Notes: generated from the letters alone by a model not told the origin. 64,000 bases of DNA from Phallusia mammillata (GCA_965637545.1 OZ281496.1:22692001-22756000); one strand, 5' to 3'. Counted from the stretch's first letter, positions 5,184 to 60,488 are shown. Numbers and translations: made by a program.

Positions 5184-6833
5184 GTCTAGAACAAAGTCTA
5201 CATAAAACACAACTTGTCCAACCCATTGTTCTGTGATAGAGGATTATGCAACAACCCACATGTTTCATTAAATTTAGCAAATCAACTTCCCATTATGTAT
5301 GTGATTTTTTATATACCTTCTTTATTATTTTGGACACAAAATGGTGTCAATCAGGCCAGTAGAAGTTTATGGGCATACCAATTGGTCGGCAACTTGTTTA
5401 TTACCTAGACTTCAGGTCCAATCCAGAGCTGACCCTTTACTGGCTGGGCTGTACCATGTCTACTGTATTGCATCTTGAAAATGAATGTATTGGGGAATCA
5501 AAAATTTATTTGACCTGTTCATGAACCAAATCACACACTACATTTTCTCTTTGCCTAGAGGTCCAACAGGTCAAAAATCAGAGTGATAAACAAACAACTT
5601 CTTTGCCAGCTAAGGGGGCAAAGTCCAATGCACTTTCAGATTTGTTTTTATAAAGCTTAATATCTCAAAATCACAATTTTTGTCTTAGTTAACTTAATTT
5701 CAACTCACATTTGGTGAATTCAGTATGTTTATACCAGACTGCCCCAAATTTGCAAATTAGTAAGATTCTTTATCTCACTTTGTATATTTTATTACCAGCA
5801 CATCAAACCTTTCAAGTAAACTTATATTACACAAAAGCGTTTTACAAGAACTAGGTGTTACTGGGTAATATTCGGAGCATAGGAAAAACTACAAACACTA
5901 CAGCATTTTATATACAAAGGTATTTTAATTTCAAATTCCACAACACATGTGCTGGTTCTTGCAAATCGTATCGGCTATTTTAAACTAAAGTGCGAACCAC
6001 ATACAAAATCCATAATTTCAGTGGCATGGTTTAAGGAGGCAAGTCTGAATTGAATATGCAACGTACCTTTTTGCAGCAAGGCATAGACATGAAAACTACT
6101 CAATTCCAACCTTTGGACTAAACGTGCCCAATATTTGTAAAGTAAATATACACAGAAGATAAATGGTGGTGTGATTTACCACCAGTAACTGTACAATAAA
6201 ATGTGCTTCAAAAAAATATTGTGAATAAGTCTTTGAACTACAAATACTGGACAAAAAATCCATTAATTTGGGGTGTTTATATCATGCCATGTTTATCATG
6301 TTTTTACAAGCAAAAAAAGCTTCAGTAATGGCACATATTTTTATGCTTTGCACTGCATTAAACACCATGTTACCTAGCTCTTCAATGTAATACAATAACG
6401 CTTGTTCATATATTGCAGATTTAGGACAATAATTCAGCATTAGTAAGTAAGATGGTTAGTAAACACTATGCTAACAGCTAACATGGTTATATGTTCTCAC
6501 TTTGTTTTTACAATGTTAAGTTGAAAGGCACTGAAAACAGTTTCACTAATACATCCTACAGCCTCCTTGTAAAGAGGTTTCCGCCAAGATCAAAGCACCA
6601 CCAATAAAAAGTAAATATGTACTGCATTACTAGGCCATGTGCATGTTACACAGTCTTACCACATTTCAGCAATGATAAAAGCAAACAACATTATTACAAA
6701 AAATGGAATATTGCATACAAAACACATACATAAGGGGTGCCATCTCTTGTTTTCTGTACTTGCCTTCATAGTGGAATATATAATATTGTTTGTAACTTTT
6801 TAACTACAGAACTGGTCACACACCATGAAGTTG

Positions 6834-41843: not shown

Positions 41844-44800
41844 CAAGTGTCAATTTTTGGTCAAGACTTTTCGATATATGTGTTCAGTAGATTGACCTTT
41901 GTTTTGTTAAACTGTTTTGGCAACTGTTGGTGTTAACACTTGATATAACATTGTTACACAATTTGCATCTTAACAATAGTGCAATTTAGGTTTAGCAGTT
42001 TGTTCCAAAGGTCTTTTCTCAACCTTCTTCATCAAATACCACAGTTTCAGTGGATATTGCTTGAATACCAATGTTTACATAGCATAAAAACCTCTACAAA
42101 TGATCATTTGTTTGTTCCCTGTATTAGCTGTGACCAAACATTCAATCAATAGCCAGTTGAACATATCAAGATATCAATATCACTTTTTTGGTTTTGAGAC
42201 TGTCACTTTGGCAGTTGGTTTCTTGTGTCTTATTTCACAAAAGGTTTAACACAAACCTGCCAGATGTACCTATATTGGTTGTTACCTTGAACATTGTCTG
42301 TGACAAAACGCTTGCATTTACCTTTTGTACACATTTTTATTTTAAAGTCAGGCCTTGAAAACCTGCCCGATACAGTTTATCCCTGGGCATTTGGTTAAGT
42401 TAGAAGGGTGATACAGATAACTGTGCTGCCAAATGTGCTGCCATGTTTCAAAGAAATGTACTTATTTTTGGCTTACAGACTTTATGTCGAAGGTACAACA
42501 ATGTTAAATGCATTTTGTTCTAACTGATAATAATTGTAAAGGACATTAGGTCATTTATAACAGTTCAGTAACCAAGGCATTGTTAAGCAACATTAGCATG
42601 TTAAAGTAGTTAGGTTGGTTAGGAAGCTAACATTGTTCTAAAGGTTTGGCATTTTTTTGGCATACACTATTTGACATTAGTTATATAAAACTGTTTTTTG
42701 TGTGTGGAAAAATCCATTTTAATGAGGTAAATCATGATTCGTTTTCCAGTGTCCTTTATTTTCACCCAGATCGATGGCAACCCTGGTTGTACAATACATA
42801 TAAGATATAACTGTGCTCAACAAAAATTCGTTTGTTTTTTTTACAGAAAAAAGTTGTATGTAGATATTTCATGGGGGATACTCTAAAATACCCAATTTAC
42901 TAATATACTTATGAAAGTGTTGACAATTAGGACTATAGGGTCGGGGTTAGGATTTGTAACTTATAATTTAATCTTAGATACCCTTTTGGGGCTAATATTC
43001 TTACAATCATTAACATGCAGTGTTTAGTACCATCCACAAGTATTATTAGTAGATTGCACATAAATTGTGTAGATTGCCTATTATTGAGGTGCCCTTTAAT
43101 AATATTCTATGATGTTTCTTTTTTAAGGGTCGTGTTGTGGAAAACCTATCTAAGAGATGTGGTGGTTTCCTGAAACAACTGTCGTTGCGCAGTTGTGAAA
43201 ATGTGGATGACAAAACCCTTCGTGTGTTTTCTCAAAACTGCAGAAACCTTGCCCAGCTTAATCTGTTCAAGTGCAAGAAAATAACTGACCAGTAAGTCAG
43301 ACATTTTCAATCTATTTGAATGAGGAAAATAAGAATAAAGGCATTTTTGGCAAAAGTACAAATGGTTTTATTTATAAGGGCCCAGGATAATGGAAATGTC
43401 GAGTTTGTGGCATTAAAAACCAATGTACATGATACCATTTTATTAAGGTTTTACGTTTGAACGTTTGTAACATCCCACTATAAAGGCTCCTTTTTTGCCA
43501 AATCACGTTCTCAATATCATTTTGCGATTATTTCATGAAAAAAAATATAGTAATGGATTAAAATACATTTACATGTATGTTTAAAACATTTTACTTAATA
43601 AGTGTTTTCAAAAATTATACTATGTCACCCTAAATGTTTTCCCCAGTCATACACTAGTTTCATAAAAGGAGATTAAGTTACAAAATGTCTAAATGCAATG
43701 TTTCCTGTGATACAACATACCTGTCATGAACTACATGTTTACACGAAAAGAAAATAAACAATATTACTTCAGAACATTTCCATATTGTGGTTGGGCGCAT
43801 CCATATCCCAACATATGATATATTACTGTTTGTCAATTGAGGCAATTTTCTTGTTTATGTTAGTAATGGGCTAAAACCATGGGGGTTTTGGATTGTCAAG
43901 CACCAAGTATTTCTTAGAAATTGTAAGTGCTTGAATGAACATGTTCAATGCATTGTGACATCATATCTGGCTTCATTGTAACGTTAGATTGGAATTTTGG
44001 TTTTTATTTTATGTGTCAAACTTTATTATTGGGCAAAGCATCAAAAACTAAACTGTTGGGCACCATGTTGAACTTATAAACTAGCACAACCCTGCCCTAC
44101 TAACTGTTAAAATAAATCTGACTTGAACAAATCTAAATACTTCACATAACTGGTTCCAACCTGGGTGGCCCATGGATGATGTTTTTTCCTCTATTGGTCT
44201 ATGCAATGGTTTTGGGGGTCCATAAAGGCAAGTAAAACATGTTTCTCAAAAAGCAATGGGTAAACTTTGCATAGGTATCCATAACCTTAAATTTTTTTAA
44301 AAAAGAGACAAGTGTTTGGGGCCACTCCTCTTTACGTTAAACAACCAGGTAATGTGTGTTTTTATGTTCAAACAATGGATAGTTATCAAAACTAAAATAC
44401 CTTACTGCTCCTATCGTACATTCTATCACACAAGCTTGCCTTTAGGAACTGAAGTGCTGCATAGGCAAAATATATTTATCTCAGTTCATAAGGATGGATG
44501 ACTTTAAGATTTAATGAATTTGTCTCAATAAGCATAAGGTTTATTACAGTCTTCATCCACTAAGCAATATGCTGGGAGATTCTGGTTTAAAGTTCAAATA
44601 TACTCTATTACAGATTTTCACAAGACTGTTTAGTTATGTATCAAATTTTTAAACACTGCTTTACTAACTTTTACTAGGACGCTTGTGAGTTTGGGAAAGA
44701 ACTGCCAACTACTGCGACATCTTGATATTTATTCCTGTCCACTTATCACTGATGAAGGGCTGGAACGATTAAGGTATACTGAAGCAGTTTTCAGGCCTAA

Positions 44801-50800: not shown

Positions 50801-53800
50801 TGTGTGCAAGTATCAGATAAAACCCTTCGTTATTTGTCACTTCACTGCTTGAAACTTACTGAACTGGTAAGTTGCATACAAATCTACAGCTTGTGAAGAC
50901 CATGTAGCTAACAGTGTCGTAGGTAGATGAAAATTTGGGGAGGGGCAAAATAGTTTGCTGTCTAATACAACTTTTTGCTAATGCTCGGTGTAACACGTGC
51001 TTTTTCCTAACACGTCAGTTGCCAAACTTTGGTTTGATGGGACAGCCAAAACGCTTTATTGATTTATTCCATGTCTACATAAATATAAAAAGCATGGATT
51101 TCAGCTTACAACTTGGTGCCAACAGTCATTTTTTCTAATTTACATATTCCTTTGATAGTTGAAAGACGAAACCACAATGATGAGGGACAAAATTACACTA
51201 AATTAAAGTTTCTCAATATACAACTTTGAAAATTTGGGTGGCTACGCCACTGGTAGCTCCCCGGCTACGCCACTGGTAGCTAAAGCTTTACTTTGCTACC
51301 TTGGTTTACCAATTGTGCTGTTACTATTTTACAGTTCATAGTGTTCTAGGGTTGCAGTGCTATATGCTCTTTTGTATTAGAGCTGGGTTGGTAATTGTAT
51401 GAAAGCTAATGTGTTAATGTGATCTTTTTTAAAGCTAAAAACAACCTAAAGTATTTCCATTAGAACCCTTTAAAAGCAACAATATTTCTGCACAAAAACT
51501 TTTAAAAACAGAAGTTTGTCAATTGTTGTGATCTGACCAGTCTGTTAATTATACATTTTTAGAAAATACTAAACTGTGTAGTATATCGTAAATCATGAGT
51601 CACCAGAGACTCAGTACAACAGATGGAGACAACAGTCGCGTATAATAACAGACTGAAAACTTTGACAAGTCTGGAGTCATCCACTGTTTTTTATGCTTAA
51701 ATATATATATTTCACCTAAGTAATAGGCATCATCAACAGTATCTAAAAACAAACAGCGCTAAAATTGTATGTCTGTTTTGAGAAAATAGTTTCAATGCTA
51801 AACTTTTTTCCAGACACTATCGCACTGTGAACTGATAACAGATGGAGGAATTCAAGATCTTGGGTCAGGACTGTGTGCAACTGACCACTTGGAGGTGCTA
51901 GAGTTGGACAACTGTCCTCTGATATCTGATGTGAGCTTAGATCATCTTGTTGGCTGTCAGGTAAATTTGAATCTACCTGGTGTTGTAAGTGTCATATACA
52001 CACATGTTCAAACAACTATTTATGCGAGTAAATCTAAGCTAGTGGTTCTCAACCTGTGGTACGTACATCATTAGTGGTACTAGTGATGGGACGATACCAG
52101 GTTTTGAAGCGAGTTCCGAGTACGAGTACCACATGTATATACCTTCGATACCGTGTACCAAGTACTTTAAGTGTAGTGTTGTACTTAGTTGTATATCACT
52201 GGCTAATTTATCTGCCATGGTCGGGGTACAGGCATGCACACACACATGCCCAAAAAATGTAATCACCACGTGATAGCGAAAAAATATACGTAACCTGACG
52301 GAACGATTTTGTGCTGTCCAAAGCAAATATTGGCAAAAAGTTGCCCATATTCTTATGGTGTAAATCTGCCTTCGGTACTCGCATGCTGGTATCGAAAACT
52401 GAGACAAAATATTTCGATACGGAGTACGAGTATCGATACCACTGAAATCGTTCGATACCATTAATACCGAGTACCGAGTACCAGGTACTCGTCCCATCAC
52501 TAAGTGGTACGCCAGACCTTTAGGTGGTATGCGAGTAGCTATCTGTTATATTTAATCAAGTCAAATCAAAATTGCAACTCTACCAACTTATCAGTCCTGG
52601 TTTTGGCGAAATCAGCACCTTGGACATTTTTTAGGAAGTGCCAACCTATGCTGGTGCACTGAACTGATTGAACACATAGTTTTTTGCTAATTGGCTGTTA
52701 AAAGCATTTATTTTTCCAAATGTTGTGTAAGTGGACAAAAGTATTTCTTGTTGCCTGCTTGTAAATGAGATTTTGTCGAAAGGTGTGCACCCCTTTTCTG
52801 TGTCCTGCTATCACATGGTGTATGCCTTATCAATTGCCATGTTACATTTTTCTCCATCATTTTGCATTTAAAAAAACAAACATGTTATTATGTGGTAGGG
52901 TCACTTACCTTCATATATTTACAGAATCTCATTCGCCTTGAACTGTACGACTGTCAACTTATCACTAGAGCAGGAATTATGCGACTACAGGTGTGTAAAT
53001 TTTTTTGTGACCATTGTGAAAAGCATGTTTTTGGTGGTGACCCATCACACCAATCAATTTATTTAACCCTTAAAGGCACTCATAAAGAACCAATGCTTTT
53101 TACTCATGATCAGTCATGAAAAAAGGTTTCAAAAATATATTTTATTTGACCCAATTTGCATAATAAAGTGATTACTTTTTGGTTTTAAATTTGTGTTTGC
53201 TGACATGTTATATTGTAAATCTACTCTTAAATTGTTAAACTCAAATTTTTGTTTAAAAAACGATTTATTTTGGTTTGATCAAAATGAAAAAATAATCCAA
53301 AACTGATTAAAGATGTATTTTTATGGCAATATTCCCCCAACATTTGGCAAAACAGAAAAAAATAGAAATTTAATCCTTTTTCAACCCATGTACACACCCT
53401 TACCAAAACCCCCAACAAAATTTACCAGTTTTACTAACTGCGCTTTTCTTTTTGTTTTCTTTTCTTTTTCGGTGTGCATAATCCCTGACGACGAATGAAT
53501 TCGCGCCGCTGCACATCAATTGGCCATCCACACCCAACTGCATGGCAACCCCCTAATTGACCCTACCTGCTCACCTACCAAAATACACAACTCATCGCTG
53601 TTGCAATTCTGTTTTGCCTGGCTTTTGGGGGGAACCCCCTTTCGGGCCATGTTGCTTTGTGTGTTTTTTTCGTGTGCGTTTGCTGTCATGCTGCCGAAAT
53701 CAGGCGCATCATCCTAATTTAGTGATTCACGCCTATTTTGCACCCGTAACGCCTCAGCCCTCTGTGGCACCGGCCCCGCAGAGGCTGTGCCCCGACTGCA

Positions 53801-53817
53801 GGTGTACGATATTATGA
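38718..53817 (+). CDS. FBXL20: F-box/LRR protein FBXL2/FBXL20 pro-orthologue, 12 coding exons (isoform with proximal last exon), 471 aa
   Basis: Exons 38718-38861, 39940-40044, 41474-41557, 43128-43291, 44678-44773, 45168-45294, 47992-48066, 49139-49330, 50765-50866, 51814-51960, 52925-52990, 53704-53817. F-box KLPKELLLRIFSYLDIVTLCRCAQVSKHWNVLALDGSNWQ, Cys-containing LRRs, and C-terminal HAYFAPVTP...CRCTIL (CAAX). The first coding exon is inferred. Confidence 0.94.
39179..39647. mobile_element. Foldback MITE with 133-bp TIRs and TA flanks (Tc1/mariner-like)
   Basis: 39179-39311 and 39515-39647 are inverted repeats with 4 mismatches, flanked by TA on both sides. Confidence 0.85.
40447..41069. 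mobile_element. hAT (Charlie-type) MITE containing a nested hAT MITE (40526-40956)
   Basis: Outer TIRs CAGGGCTGCTCAAAC / GTTTGAGAAGCCCTG with perfect TSD TTATAGAG. Inner TIRs CAGGGATGCACAACC / GGTTGTGCATCCCTG with an eroded TSD. Confidence 0.85.
41148..41420. repeat. Intronic tandem repeat, unit about 110-115 bp, about 2.4 copies
   Basis: The block CAACAACCCTCTATGTAGCTCTATTTATGTG...CCTAAGGTATTAAT recurs near 41158, 41266 and 41388. Confidence 0.8.
46080..46131 (-). ncRNA. Type I hammerhead ribozyme, minus-strand arm of the palindrome
   Basis: Minus strand: AGCTGCA-CTGATGA-GACCT[TAT]AGGTC-GAAA-CAGT[GTGC]ACTG-TC-TGCAGCT. It has a 7-bp stem I, 5-bp stem II, 5-bp stem III, an intact core and a GUC cleavage triplet. 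Confidence 0.85.
46083..46248. repeat. Perfect 78-bp inverted repeat (arms 46083-46160 and 46171-46248, 10-nt spacer)
   Basis: Base-by-base comparison of the arms shows no mismatch. Confidence 0.97.
46203..46248 (+). ncRNA. Type I hammerhead ribozyme, plus-strand arm (stem I truncated to 4 bp)
   Basis: TGCA-CTGATGA (46207-46213)-GACCT[TAT]AGGTC-GAAAC (46227-46231)...GTC (46242-46244)-TGCA. Confidence 0.8.
48103..48258. mobile_element. hAT MITE family A copy, 156 bp
   Basis: TIRs CAGTGGTGGAATTC / GAATCCCACCACTG. Perfect TSD CCTTTAAC at 48095-48102 and 48259-48266. Confidence 0.9.
50912..51275. mobile_element. hAT MITE (CAGTGGCGTAGCC-type TIR), 364 bp, right terminus duplicated
   Basis: Left CAGTGTCGTAGG and right GGCTACGCCACTG (present twice). 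Perfect TSD GTAGCTAA at 50904-50911 and 51276-51283. Confidence 0.8.
52081..52502. mobile_element. hAT MITE family B, copy 2, inserted into a Charlie-type element starting at about 52040
   Basis: Inverted homologue of 7476-7893 with perfect TSD AGTGGTAC at 52073-52080 and 52503-52510. The host begins TAGTGGTTCTCAACCTGTGGTAC. Confidence 0.9.
53432..53703 (+). promoter_or_regulatory. Distant branch point, polypyrimidine tract and AG-exclusion zone before the proximal FBXL last exon
   Basis: TACTAAC at 53432-53438 followed by a U/C tract to about 53470. No AG dinucleotide from 53429 to 53701. TGCATG at 53539-53544. Confidence 0.8.
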
Positions 53818-54311
53818 TGTGAACCGCTGGCATGTTTTAAAGTATGTAAACACTTACCTATTGATTTGCATCAGTTACCAGGTCAAATAGTGTGTAAACC
53901 GCTGAATAGGATATAGAATATATAAATTGGCATTATATGGAAAACCATCACTATTCTAGTTTACAACTGAAAAACGTTGTTGTCCAAAATTGAACTGGTT
54001 ATATCAGATAATAAAGATTGAAAATATGATCTTAGATAACTATAAATGTTGCTAAAATATGGCAATCTTCATATCCCAGTGTTTTCCAACCAGGGGTTCA
54101 TTGACCCCCAATGGTTCTTTAAAATGGTTTCAGGTGATCTGTGAAAGTATTTCAAGTCGTTTTAAGCAAAATCTGTCGATTGCATAGAAAAAAGTGCCTT
54201 ACATGCCTAAAAAGTTATTTTTGAAACCTATACGAAAACTATTCCTTTGCCAAAGTAACTTAAGCCTTAGAAGTAATTATGACGTGTCAATATATGATTA
54301 TGACATCACAG

Positions 54312-54431
54312 AACGCCTTGCCGAAGATCAAGATTCACGCGTACTTTGCCCACCAACCCGTGAACCCGTCCGCAGCCAACCAATATCGGGGCGGGAGACG
54401 TCGTTACTGCCGCTGTTGCGCCATCTTGTGA
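54312..54431 (+). CDS. FBXL20: Alternative (distal) last exon of FBXL2/20 encoding a second CAAX tail
   Basis: CAG|AAC... in phase 0 translates NALPKIKIHAYFAHQPVNPSAANQYRGGRRRYCRCCAIL*, clearly homologous to the proximal last exon. Confidence 0.85.
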   Translation, partial: NALPKIKIHAYFAHQPVNPSAANQYRGGRRRYCRCCAIL

Positions 54432-57093
54432 CCAACCCTGGACGGGAACGACATCCGCATAGCGGCGCCCTTGAGACATTACACATGCACTTCGCAGCCG
54501 ATTGGAAAACGCTATTCGACACCTTGCAACCGTTTTTTTGTTTTTGCCACTTTACACTCTTGTATTTTTCATAGAAAATCACTGGAATGTGGAAATTTCA
54601 ACTGCCTTGTAAGTTGTGGAGACAAACTGTTGGTTAAAAGTTTGTCTGGTCCGAAAAAAAATCAGAAGAAAAACAGCCTTTAGTTTACGGACAACGAAAG
54701 TTTCAAACCTCCAGTTTCAGCTTTCTTGAACGGTTTAGCCTTAAGTTAATTGAAACCTATTGTTTAATTGCACTTTTCAAACATGTTGTGGGTTGACATT
54801 GAAGTAATTGTTTTGGATTTCAATTTTAAACGATTTTTCCCTGGTGCTTTCAAACATACAAATATCAGTTAAGGGTAATATTTTGCGTGGGCTGTCCCTT
54901 TTGCAGAACAAAACTAGAATAATTTTATTCTTTGTTTTGTCTCAAATTTAGGAACATTAATGTTTGGTTCTATTCACTAAATTCACAGACACGGCCCTTG
55001 GAATGTGTATTGTATTTTTTTGGGTATAATTTTAAAACATTGTCCCTCTTATATGAAGTGCCAATAACATATCAACACACCTTGCTTTTTGGCACATATT
55101 GCTGTGCCATCGCAACCAGTTAAATGCAAAACTGTATACTTGGGCAAAAAATTCTCCACGCAAGCATACGGATTGGTACAGTACACCACATATGAACGAC
55201 AACCTTTTCTGTTCGTCTATCACACGCGTTGCAACATATGTATACATGCTATCGCTCTTTCTATATTGTATGTAGTACATAGGCAATCCCTTTCCTGTAG
55301 GCTTTACGCGTATATACATATAGCATGTAGCCTACATCGTTTCTACGCCACCAAATCGTGTTGCAAACATTTTGATGTTATTACTGCCCGGATTTTTTGC
55401 CAGCTTTATAATTTAGATACAAATCGTTGACAAGAAATGCATTGCTTACTGGTCGCATTCATGTCTGCGATGCTAATGAGTAATTATGTTAAATCACTAG
55501 CAAACTGTCACATTCTTTATGCCTTACACGCTGAAATCGGGTTCCCAACTAGCATTGCGCAACGAACCTTAACAACATAGTTTTCTTCCTTTTTTTCAGC
55601 AAATGGACAAATTAGCATTTAGTTTCAAATCGGCTAATCATTGATCTAAGCCTCTGTCATCGAAAATGTGTTGCCTGTTCGGAAGCAATTGTTTTCTATA
55701 GGTGCTGCAAAATTACATGTTTTGACTTTTTCTCAGATTTAAAAAATCTATTTGGTCACGGAAAAAATTCACTTTCTGTTTTGACAATTAACAAAAAACG
55801 ACCAAAGTTGTCTTCACTAGGCTTATTTCGCCTTGTCCAACAAGCCCGTGTAGGCCTATTCTGCTTTCAAAATTTGTGTGAAATCGCTTGAAGTGCAGCC
55901 GAATGCTCAAATTAAACCCAGTTTTGTACACAGAAGTTGTTTAAATTTGCCCTGAAAGACAAGTCTTGTAATCGGCTTGGCATCGAACGCCAATGTGTCA
56001 ACATAACTATTCCGTAATAACAGTTAAGTTGCAATGATTATGTATTTTTTAAACATAACTGGTCAAAAAATGTAGTTAAATTATGGCAACTTATTTCTTT
56101 TCTCGTTCACTGCTCTACTTTGTCGCAAATTTCAAGCGGAAATATTTCAAATCGTGTTTTTTATGTTCTGTACGTGTATTTGTATCCAATCTGTATCATA
56201 CCGTTTGCACGCTCTCGTTCTCTCACGTGCCCTGCTGTAGAGGATTGTTCGTTTCCTTTTTTCCTCTGTTCTTCTTTCTGCTTCTGTTTGCTTACGCTTT
56301 CCGCTCGTCAAGCATCACCCGTGAGTATTAAATACAGTAAAATGTATGCGTCAAAAATATCACCTGAATTGAATATTTAAGGATGTACTTTTAATTTAGA
56401 GATATCGTAGTTCATGGTTCTTCAGTGCATATTTCTGTGACTTTTTGAAATCTATAAGATAGGGTTTGTTGCCCTTTAGCGTTTAAATTGAAAACTTAAT
56501 CCTTCTATTTTCAAGCTGTTGCTGCGAGGCATAATATCTACTTTTTAGAGCAATTCTATTTTTGCACTGACGTTTCAACGTCCTATACAGCTGTTCTATA
56601 CGTCCTATACGACCTAGGTCGCCTTTTTCAGGGTAAATAACATTGAATGTGCGTAATTACATTTATTCTATTTTCCCATTTGAACAGATTGATCGATTTA
56701 TGTAACCTGACGTTGTAGCTAAAATAGCCCTCTGAATCCACATGTAATTACATTTGCAGAAAAAAATACGTGGGACTATGTTGGGCTGAAAATAAGATAA
56801 TGGAAAACCAAGATGGTCGAATGCCGTATTGATCACATTTGATAAAAGTGGATGTTACTTTTTGCAGAAGATATTTAACAATATGAAAAACGATCGTAGA
56901 CGATCAGACAAATTTGGTTTTGGCGCCAGGCGTCGCTGATTTTCTAATATCGTGGCGCCCACTATTTTGAAACTTGGTAAATAGCTTGCGATTTTAAGAC
57001 CAACGGTATTTAATGGAAAATCAGTCTTTTAAACTGAGGAAGGAAATTATCCATCTTTTGTTTTGCTGTTTTATGTTTTTATTAGTTGCAAAA

Positions 57094-57420
57094 TGTCCTG
57101 GGTATGACGTTAAACTGCATCCGTCGTTCCACTGAGAGGTAGGCCTACTATCTCACCCCAGCAAGGTTTCGGTGGTTATGGTCTCCAATGGAGTGAAGAG
57201 TTGACTCTTAGCCTAGCCAACACATGAAATAGGAGAAGGAAAACTCTGATTTCAAGCCACCTACCTCGGTAGGGGATCTGAGCGGATGTAGAGCAGCCTC
57301 GACAAAAGCTCTGGCGGAAAGGAACTGGGGCTCCCACCGCCGTACAATGCCCCTTGTATACAATCATGTTTGATTGTCGCCGACGTCAGACTCTAACAGG
57401 GCACCTCTATTGATTGATTA
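57094..57420 (+). mobile_element. SINE-like or short non-LTR retro-insertion, 327 bp
   Basis: GC-rich block flanked by the 10-bp direct repeat AGTTGCAAAA (57084-57093, 57421-57430) and ending in an (ATTG)n-like tail. Confidence 0.55.
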
Positions 57421-59924: not shown

Positions 59925-60488
59925 ATGGGAGACGAGGTTAAATCCAAAGATTTTGGATTGAAAGCACAAAAAAAGATTTTGGGAAAGATGGCATCGAAAA
60001 GTTTAACGAAAAAGATTATTGATGAGAAGACCTATGACATTTTAGATGAGTTTTACAAGGTTAGAAGGCAGCAAACAGGAAACAAAAAAGATGCTGAAAA
60101 AATGCTCCACAATATCATCAAGGTCATGATCAAGGTTGGTGTCTTGGAAAAAAACGATCGTTTTTCCGCTGATGAGGTAAAACTGGCTCACAAACTGCAG
60201 CAAAAAACAAAAATGGCTGCCATGACCATAGTCAGTTTCTACGAAGTGGAATTTTCATTTGACAAATATGTCTTGTCAACACAAATCAACGAAGGAAGGA
60301 CCATTTTGCAACAGCTTGTCGAAAACCATTTGACATCCAAGTCTAAGGACCGTATTAACTCAGTGTTTGACATTCTCGGGGATACAGAGTTTCTAGAGCT
60401 TCTGTTTGAACCAAATGGCAACTACAAAGATTCTCTGGCCAAAATTGCCATCCGGCTAAACGAACTCCTTGATGATGGGGTCTTATAA
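59925..60488 (+). CDS. TNFAIP8: TNFAIP8/TIPE family protein, single coding exon, 187 aa
   Basis: SKDFGLKAQKKILGKMASK...IIKVMIKVGVL...AAMTIVSFYEVEFSFD...HLTSKSKDRINSVF is the TNFAIP8 family signature. Confidence 0.95.
   Translation: MGDEVKSKDFGLKAQKKILGKMASKSLTKKIIDEKTYDILDEFYKVRRQQTGNKKDAEKMLHNIIKVMIKVGVLEKNDRFSADEVKLAHKLQQKTKMAAMTIVSFYEVEFSFDKYVLSTQINEGRTILQQLVENHLTSKSKDRINSVFDILGDTEFLELLFEPNGNYKDSLAKIAIRLNELLDDGVL

What the first reader, a model, noticed from the sequence alone, without database searches (positions are those of the whole stretch)
53429..53703. 273-nt AG-exclusion zone with a distant consensus branch point
Seen: TACTAAC and a long pyrimidine tract about 265 nt upstream of the acceptor, no AG for 273 nt (very unlikely by chance at roughly 5% per position), an RBFOX-type TGCATG, and a GGGGG/CCCCC mini-stem. 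Established: distant branch points with long AG-exclusion zones mark strongly regulated exons (for example alpha-tropomyosin and alpha-actinin), and ACUAAC is also the QKI/SF1 motif. Inference: this is the control element choosing the proximal last exon, perhaps in muscle or neurons.
Basis: partly seen in the sequence, partly recalled or inferred. Interest (0 to 1): 0.7.

Follow-up and report, generated by a model that had tools for sequence, protein, structure and literature searches.

The report
Conserved AG-free zone before alternative exon
In a sea squirt, the intron in front of one of two alternative last exons of the FBXL2/20 gene has no AG for 273 bases behind a perfect branch-site motif. 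An unrelated-looking intron at the same place in a second tunicate has 429 AG-free bases, so this is very probably a distant-branch-point splice site of the kind known from regulated vertebrate exons.

Summary
Window 53429-53701 holds no AG for 273 nt; the next longest AG-free run is 152 nt. Block shuffles that keep local composition expect about 8 AG (P about 5e-5). CT, GA and TC are at expected counts.

The run ends at the acceptor (AG 53702-53703) of a real coding exon, the proximal of two alternative last exons of an FBXL2/20 orthologue. It starts 4 nt before TACTAAC (branch A 53437, -266), which is followed by a 27-nt U-rich tract. No YTNAY motif lies within 109 nt of the acceptor. Ten other acceptors of the gene have AG-free zones of 22-59 nt.

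New evidence comes from an orthologous locus in a second, unidentified tunicate (JGI metagenome contigs). Its fourfold sites are saturated and its intron is barely alignable, yet it has the same two last exons and a 429-nt AG-free zone before the proximal one.

This fits the distant-branch-point class of Gooding et al. 2006. Nothing maps the branch point. The orthologue also has GACTAAC at -22. The RBFOX, QKI and tissue claims and the G/C mini-stem are unsupported. RNA-like contigs show only the distal exon. The scan noted another long AG-free zone elsewhere in this genome (s1-361615).

The parts
52925..52990 (+). Penultimate coding exon of the FBXL2/20 orthologue (NLIRLELYDCQLITRAGIMRLQ). Its donor CAG|GTGTGT at 52991 is shared by both alternative last exons.
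   Evidence: Sequence. tblastn with vertebrate FBXL20 fragments. 82% identical exon in L001.
53429..53701 (+). AG-exclusion zone, 273 nt, the 3' part of the 713-nt intron 52991-53703.
   Evidence: AGEZ1 is 273 against AGEZ2 of 61, and 22-59 for ten other acceptors of the gene.
53432..53438 (+). TACTAAC, the candidate distant branch site (branch A 53437, 266 nt before the acceptor G).
   Evidence: It is the only 7/7 match in the zone, and the next 30 nt are 90% pyrimidine.
53444..53470 (+). U-rich polypyrimidine tract next to the candidate branch site, with three UCUU (PTB-type) motifs.
53539..53544 (+). TGCATG (RBFOX-type hexamer), 102 nt after the candidate branch A.
   Evidence: The orthologue has TGCATG 98 nt after its candidate branch A. 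Chance presence is 0.23 and 0.18.
53627..53639 (+). GGGGGGAACCCCC mini hairpin. Not conserved and with no support for a role.
   Evidence: Absent from L001.
53702..53703 (+). Acceptor AG of the proximal last exon.
   Evidence: It is the only AG that joins exon N-1 in frame to the conserved coding sequence.
53704..53817 (+). Proximal alternative last exon, coding part and stop: AHHPNLVIHAYFAPVTPQPSVAPAPQRLCPDCRCTIL*.
   Evidence: The last 11 codons show 7 synonymous and 0 replacement differences against L001.
54010..54015 (+). AATAAA, the candidate poly(A) signal of the proximal last exon.
   Evidence: It is a motif only and its use is not shown.
54310..54431 (+). Acceptor AG, coding part and stop of the distal alternative last exon (NALPKIKIHAYF...GGRRRYCRCCAIL*). 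Its AG-free zone is an ordinary 36 nt.
   Evidence: The RNA-like contig of X9 starts at 54312.
54432..56325 (+). 3'UTR of the distal last exon.
   Evidence: Contigs of X5 and X9 cover 54312-56325. ATTAAA lies at 56327.

Best explanation
The tract is a true AG-exclusion zone of a distant-branch-point 3' splice site. The intron after the penultimate FBXL2/20 exon can end at either of two last exons.

Proposed mechanism for the proximal exon:
1. U2 snRNP and U2AF assemble on TACTAAC (53432-53438) and the adjacent U-rich tract, at least 100 nt and most probably 266 nt upstream of the exon.
2. The first step of splicing does not need the AG.
3. In the second step, the first AG downstream of the branch (53702-53703) is taken.
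4. Any AG arising in between would be used instead and would wreck the CaaX tail. AG is therefore purged by selection.

The decision for or against the proximal exon is then made at the distant branch site and tract and in the spacer. Repressors such as PTB (UCUU motifs) or RBFOX (UGCAUG) could act there.

Shown: the zone, its specificity, its position, its conservation and the coding status of both exons. Inferred: the position of the branch, the scanning step and any regulator.
For: - AG-free run of 273 nt with P about 5e-5 or less even when local composition is kept. CT, GA and TC are normal.
- The run ends exactly at the acceptor of an exon under purifying selection.
- The run begins 4 nt before the only perfect TACTAAC, which is followed by a 27-nt U-rich tract.
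- No YTNAY motif lies within 109 nt of the acceptor.
- AG frequency upstream is normal (AGEZ2 = 61), and ten other acceptors of the gene have zones of 22-59 nt.
- The orthologous locus L001 (L002, L004 and L005 are the same species; L003 is the same contig as L001) has a 429-nt AG-free zone before the same exon, against a next-longest AG-to-AG gap of 135 (431 for this zone). All four distinct contigs show it.
- Fourfold sites between the species are 30% identical, that is saturated, and the zones align at only p about 0.05. The AG exclusion was therefore kept independently. From the L001 composition (87 A; G fraction 0.19), the chance of no AG is about 1e-8.
- In L001, a branch-like AATTAAC with a U-rich tract again sits at the 5' edge of the zone.
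- These are the published hallmarks of distant-branch-point exons, including conservation of a large zone without alignable sequence (PMC1431707).
Against: - No lariat or splice-junction read is available. The four runs laid are contigs and gave no joints.
- RNA-like contigs (X5, X9) cover only the distal exon and its 3'UTR, so use of the proximal acceptor is inferred from protein-level selection and has not been seen.
- TACTAAC is not conserved. The orthologue has a weaker AATTAAC (5/7) at the edge and a 6/7 GACTAAC at the conventional -22, though without a pyrimidine tract.
- In Phallusia several weaker YTNAY motifs lie at -109 to -147, so branching could be spread over the zone.
- Only two species could be compared.
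Confidence: 0.62

Rival explanations
1. The branch point is conventional and close to the acceptor. Candidates are GUCAU at -15 in Phallusia and GACUAAC at -22 in the orthologue. The AG-free zone is kept for another RNA-level reason, for example as a protein-binding platform, or because a strong upstream pyrimidine tract would otherwise activate cryptic acceptors.
For: The orthologue has a 6/7 branch consensus at -22. The 3' part of both zones is GU- and UGCU-rich and shares the best local match, TTTTTTTCGTGTGCGTTTGCTGT.
Against: AGs upstream of a used branch point are harmless, so a near branch does not explain 273 and 429 AG-free nt kept across saturated divergence. GA and CT are not depleted. 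Phallusia has no YTNAY within 109 nt, and -15 is very close for a branch. The L001 -22 motif has no pyrimidine tract behind it (47% pyrimidine).
Confidence: 0.2
2. The stretch is mainly a DNA-level regulatory element (open chromatin or an enhancer) in the intron, and the lack of AG is incidental to its composition.
For: One 211-nt contig of run X1 lies wholly inside the zone (53467-53677), while that run has no contig on any exon or 3'UTR of the gene. That would fit a DNA or ATAC-type library. The zone is richer in G+C and CpG than its surroundings.
Against: The type of that run is only guessed. A DNA element gives no reason for a strand-specific loss of AG with normal CT. It also does not explain why the zone ends exactly at an acceptor in two species.
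Confidence: 0.08
3. Chance, low complexity or an AG-poor repeat.
For: Gooding et al. report that some long zones are caused by AG-free repeats. The window holds many T-rich tracts.
Against: P is at most 1e-4 with local composition kept. The zone is single copy. The finding recurs at the orthologous acceptor of a second species.
Confidence: 0.02

Closest known systems
Vertebrate distant-branch-point exons defined by AG-exclusion zones (alpha-tropomyosin exon 3, alpha-actinin SM exon, PTB exon 11, GABBR1 exon 23; Gooding et al. 2006, PMC1431707)
   Same: A long AG-free zone lies directly upstream of an alternatively used exon. A consensus branch site (that paper even reports TACTAAC at -214) with an adjacent pyrimidine tract sits at the 5' end of the zone. 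AG frequency upstream is normal. The large zone is conserved without alignable sequence. UCUU motifs lie at the tract.
   Different: The host is a tunicate. The exon is an alternative last exon, not a cassette or mutually exclusive internal exon. The branch is 446 nt from the upstream donor, so mutual exclusion cannot be steric. The branch is not mapped, and PTB dependence is unknown.
Yeast introns with long branch-to-3'ss spacers folded into a structure (COF1; PMC3239191, title and abstract only)
   Same: There is a long distance between a perfect UACUAAC and the acceptor. When the fold is cut at these ends, a helix pairs the flank of the branch site with the acceptor in both species.
   Different: The helix vanishes as soon as 50 nt or more of flank are added. 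The overall fold is no better than shuffles (z = -1.1 and +0.6). There is no support for structural shortening here.
Vertebrate paralogues FBXL2 and FBXL20, prenylated CaaX F-box proteins
   Same: The C-terminal ...HAYFAPVTP...C-x-C-C-a-a-L tail is homologous. Two tail versions exist.
   Different: In the tunicates the two tails are alternative last exons of one gene, not two genes. This concerns the stake of the switch and not its mechanism.

Membership tests
Distant-branch-point (dBP) exon with AG-exclusion zone (criteria of PMC1431707) | AG-exclusion zone of 100-150 nt or more directly upstream of a real 3' splice site | tested here: met
   The zone is 273 nt and ends at the acceptor of a conserved coding exon.
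Distant-branch-point (dBP) exon with AG-exclusion zone (criteria of PMC1431707) | AG at normal frequency upstream of the zone (first zone much longer than second) | tested here: met
   AGEZ1 is 273 against AGEZ2 of 61. In L001 the zone is 429 nt and the next AG upstream is about 54 nt away.
Distant-branch-point (dBP) exon with AG-exclusion zone (criteria of PMC1431707) | Consensus branch site with adjacent pyrimidine tract near the 5' end of the zone | tested here: met
   TACTAAC lies 4 nt into the zone, followed by 90% pyrimidine. L001 has AATTAAC 21 nt into its zone, followed by 73% pyrimidine.
Distant-branch-point (dBP) exon with AG-exclusion zone (criteria of PMC1431707) | No good branch site in the conventional position | tested here: inconclusive
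   Phallusia has no YTNAY within 109 nt. L001 has GACTAAC at -22 without a pyrimidine tract.
Distant-branch-point (dBP) exon with AG-exclusion zone (criteria of PMC1431707) | Zone not caused by an AG-free repeat | tested here: met
   The zone is single copy in the window and has low depth in the runs, against up to about 1000 in run X1 for the nearby repeat.
Distant-branch-point (dBP) exon with AG-exclusion zone (criteria of PMC1431707) | Large zone conserved in the orthologue | tested here: met
   The zone is 429 nt in four distinct contigs of a second tunicate. Fourfold sites are 30% identical.
Distant-branch-point (dBP) exon with AG-exclusion zone (criteria of PMC1431707) | Exon is alternatively spliced | tested here: inconclusive
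   Two last exons, both under protein-level selection, share one donor. Contigs show only the distal one in use, and no junction was seen.
Distant-branch-point (dBP) exon with AG-exclusion zone (criteria of PMC1431707) | Branch mapped 100 nt or more from the acceptor | not testable with these tools
   Only contigs were available, not raw reads. This needs lariat RT-PCR or branch-spanning reads.
RBFOX-regulated exon | Conserved (U)GCAUG near the regulated exon | tested here: inconclusive
   TGCATG is present in both zones, 102 and 98 nt after the candidate branch A. Chance presence is 0.23 and 0.18.
QKI response element | ACUAAY core plus a UAAY half-site within about 20 nt (from memory of the published SELEX element) | tested here: not met
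   No second TAAC or TAAT lies within 20 nt of 53433-53438 (sequence).
Structure-shortened branch-to-acceptor spacer (yeast type) | Stable, context-independent structure that brings branch and acceptor together | tested here: not met
   z-scores are -1.1 and +0.6. The bridging helix is lost in larger contexts in both species.

The most novel reading that the evidence does not exclude
The distant branch site works as an early-commitment switch for an alternative last exon. Branching at 53437 can occur before either acceptor is transcribed, and it then forces use of the first AG, which is the proximal exon. Occupancy of one U-rich tract would therefore decide which lipid-anchor tail SCF-FBXL2/20 carries: CPDCRCTIL, or CRCCAIL with a Cys doublet. 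This would be a single-gene, splicing-based counterpart of the vertebrate FBXL2/FBXL20 gene pair, old enough to be shared by distantly related tunicates.
Probability: 0.22. Interest if true: 0.6.

Novelty: new member of a known kind. Interest (0 to 1): 0.45.

Why it matters
Distant branch points are rare and have been studied almost only in vertebrates, where every dissected case is a tightly regulated exon. This is a clean tunicate example in which selection against AG is visible across saturated divergence. It marks the proximal FBXL2/20 last exon as regulated and points to the ~270-nt spacer as the place to look for the regulators. It also offers a compact test system: a 713-nt intron in an electroporatable ascidian embryo can test the scanning model and show how a distant branch influences last-exon choice. 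The stake of the switch is the prenylated tail that places an SCF ubiquitin ligase on membranes.

Tried and rejected
- **Bridging RNA structure.** Folding 53429-53712 and L001 5591-6040 pairs the flank of the branch site with the acceptor at probabilities of 0.7-0.99 in both species. The helix disappears with 50 nt or more of added flank, and the overall z-scores are -1.1 and +0.6. I rejected it as an end effect.
- **Known RNA families.** No Rfam match, even at E <= 1.
- **Sequence conservation of the zone.** Local alignment gives p = 0.048, shared k-mers are not significant, and collinearity of the first 120 nt gives p = 0.04-0.08. At best this is weak.
- **RNA evidence.** Read laying on 51500-57400 with four runs gave no joints. 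Contigs lie on the distal exon and 3'UTR (X5, X9), on 53828-53999 and 54128-54279 (X19) and inside the zone (X1). The run types are only guessed.
- **More orthologues.** Word searches with the proximal exon, the distal ORF and P0001 found nothing further. The metagenome scan gave only the same second species plus five spurious GC-rich loci, L006-L010.
- **Organism of L001.** It could not be identified.
- **In-frame extension of the exon into the zone.** The ORF opens only at 53557 and there is no AG to enter it.

Vertebrate FBXL20 protein fragments (P0009, P0013) were used only as rulers for exon mapping, and no contig of theirs was fetched.

Full report
**Observation**

The window is AT-rich animal DNA. 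AG occurs at 53427 and not again until 53702, so 53429-53701 (273 nt) is AG-free. This AG-to-AG gap is 275; the next longest in the 64 kb is 154.

- TACTAAC at 53432-53438, with the branch A at 53437, 266 nt before G53703
- a 27-nt pyrimidine tract with a single G at 53444-53470
- TGCATG at 53539-53544
- GGGGGGAACCCCC at 53627-53639

A first-order Markov model of the window expects 0.0016 runs of this length, and mononucleotide shuffles of the zone give P = 5e-6. A and G are partly segregated along the zone, so I also shuffled only within blocks of 20-60 nt. About 8 AG are still expected, and P(no AG) is 5e-5 to 1e-4. CT (23 against 27 expected) and GA (7 against 9.1) are normal. The depletion is therefore specific to AG on the + strand, which points to an RNA-level constraint on the + transcript.

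**Context**

tblastn with vertebrate FBXL20 fragments returned by the big search maps an FBXL2/20 orthologue on the + strand from about 39.9 kb (F-box) to 54.4 kb.

- The penultimate exon is 52925-52990 (NLIRLELYDCQLITRAGIMRLQ, donor CAG|GTGTGT).
- The first candidate last exon is proximal, 53704-53814 plus stop. It encodes AHHPNLVIHAYFAPVTPQPSVAPAPQRLCPDCRCTIL.
- The second is distal, 54312-54428 plus stop. It encodes NALPKIKIHAYFAHQ...GGRRRYCRCCAIL.

Both join the penultimate exon in phase 0. The AG-free zone is thus the last 273 nt of a 713-nt intron, and its end is the acceptor of the proximal exon. No other AG can join the exons in frame, and the frame upstream of the exon opens only at 53557.

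Ten other putative acceptors of the same gene, the distal last exon among them, have AG-free zones of 22-59 nt. Upstream of the long zone, AG recurs after 61 nt. A scan for branch-like motifs finds no YTNAY within 109 nt of the acceptor. TACTAAC at -266 is the only perfect match and the only one followed by 90% pyrimidine.

**Conservation**

A HMMER search of 1.84 billion representatives with the 37-residue exon returned one 74-residue ORF (P0001) ending in ...RLCPDCRCTIL. Its contig, L001, comes from a JGI metagenome. A metagenome scan added one more fetch of that same contig (L003) and three further contigs of the same species from other samples (L002, L004, L005). The organism is unidentified, but it carries the orthologous gene:
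- exon N-2 is 85% identical at the protein level
- exon N-1 is 82% identical
- both last exons have their tail types conserved

Over the last 11 codons of the proximal exon there are 7 synonymous and no replacement differences, so this exon is translated in both species. Fourfold-degenerate sites are 30% identical (9 of 30), which means neutral sites are saturated.

In L001 the proximal acceptor is AG 6020-6021, and the previous AG is at 5589. That gives a 429-nt AG-free zone (AG-to-AG gap 431), against a next-longest gap of 135 in the locus. It is identical in extent in all four distinct contigs. About 16 AG would be expected there, and none of 20,000 block shuffles lacked AG. The distal acceptor of L001 has an ordinary zone of about 29 nt.

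The two zones are barely alignable. Local alignment gives p = 0.048 and shared k-mers are not significant. The AG exclusion has therefore been maintained independently in two lineages.

**Mechanism**

The features match the published definition of distant-branch-point exons (PMC1431707):
- the branch site and pyrimidine tract lie at the 5' end of the AG-free zone
- AG frequency upstream is normal
- regulatory elements lie in the spacer
- such exons are associated with alternative splicing and, in all dissected cases, with PTB

I therefore take the zone to be maintained because branching happens far upstream, most probably at A53437. Any new AG would then become the acceptor and destroy the CaaX tail. 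In L001 a branch-like AATTAAC with a U-rich tract again marks the 5' edge (-405).

Two facts limit this reading. L001 also has GACTAAC at -22, although with no pyrimidine tract behind it. Phallusia has weaker YTNAY motifs at -109 to -147. Which adenosine is used is therefore inferred and not shown.

UCUU motifs flank the candidate branch in both species. TGCATG lies 102 and 98 nt downstream of it. Its presence alone has chance probabilities of 0.23 and 0.18, so this is a lead and no more. The G/C mini-stem is absent from L001. The QKI half-site is missing.

**RNA evidence**

Twenty runs hold part of 52800-54400. Four were laid on 51500-57400, all as contigs, and no joint was reported.

- X9 and X5 look like RNA. 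Their contigs begin at the distal acceptor (54312) and cover the 3'UTR to 56325, close to ATTAAA at 56327. They have nothing on introns or on the proximal exon.
- X19 has low-depth contigs at 53828-53999 and 54128-54279.
- X1 has a single 211-nt contig wholly inside the AG-free zone and none on exons. That may mean a DNA or accessibility library, or intronic RNA. This is unexplained.

The distal exon is thus the form seen. Use of the proximal acceptor rests on protein-level selection. AATAAA at 54010 could end the proximal exon in Phallusia. L001 has only AGTAAA in the corresponding interval.

**Rejected ideas**

- A helix pairing the flank of the branch site with the acceptor appears in both species when the fold is cut at those ends. 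It vanishes in larger contexts, and the folds are no better than shuffles.
- Rfam gives nothing.
- The zone is not a repeat.

**Verdict**

This is a new, conserved tunicate member of the known class of distant-branch-point or long-AGEZ exons, here guarding an alternative last exon. The specific regulators and tissues are untested. The scan has noted another long AG-free zone elsewhere in this genome (s1-361615), which I did not check.

Noticed in passing
window 53467-53677: Run X1 (library type only guessed) has one 211-nt contig lying wholly inside the AG-free zone but no contig on any exon or 3'UTR of the gene. All four runs of that study hold a similar share of the words. It could be open chromatin or low-pass DNA, or intronic RNA.
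   Followed up: partly
window 53704-53817 and 54312-54431; L001 6022-6135 and 6787-6906: The two alternative tails differ in the cysteines next to the CaaX Cys: CPDCRCTIL against YCRCCAIL, which has a CC doublet. Both types are conserved in the second tunicate. Human FBXL2 is reported to be palmitoylated on cysteines beside its CaaX (abstract of PMC9988375), so the isoforms may differ in membrane targeting.
   Followed up: partly
window 44098, 44662, 53432: All three + strand copies of TACTAAC in the 64 kb lie in FBXL2/20 introns. The one at 44662 has its branch A only 10 nt before the G of the acceptor AG at 44676-44677, an unusually short branch-to-acceptor distance.
   Followed up: no
window 52090-52500: A high-copy repeat lies in the intron before the penultimate exon, with summed contig depth up to about 1000 in X1. 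The minus-strand ORF 52042-52500 has no Pfam match.
   Followed up: partly
window 59925-60488: A single-exon ORF of the TNFAIP8 family (PF05527, E 1.5e-63) lies 3.6 kb downstream of the FBXL2/20 3'UTR on the same strand. Contigs of X1 and X19 at 57108-57400 may mark its upstream region.
   Followed up: partly
L001 6221-6354 and 5935-6000: In the second tunicate, a 40-nt tandem array follows the proximal exon. The last ~130 nt of its AG-free zone contain a duplicated ~45-nt unit (AACGAATCT..TTTGTTTGTGGTGAyTAA). The copy nearest the acceptor supplies the GACTAAC at -22, and the duplication has stayed AG-free.
   Followed up: partly
window 53664-53687; L001 5789-5816: The best local match between the two zones (TTTTTT..TCGTGTsCGT.TTGCTGT) abuts the acceptor in Phallusia but lies about 205 nt upstream of it in the orthologue. 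This suggests the orthologue gained about 200 nt of AG-free sequence between this element and the exon.
   Followed up: no
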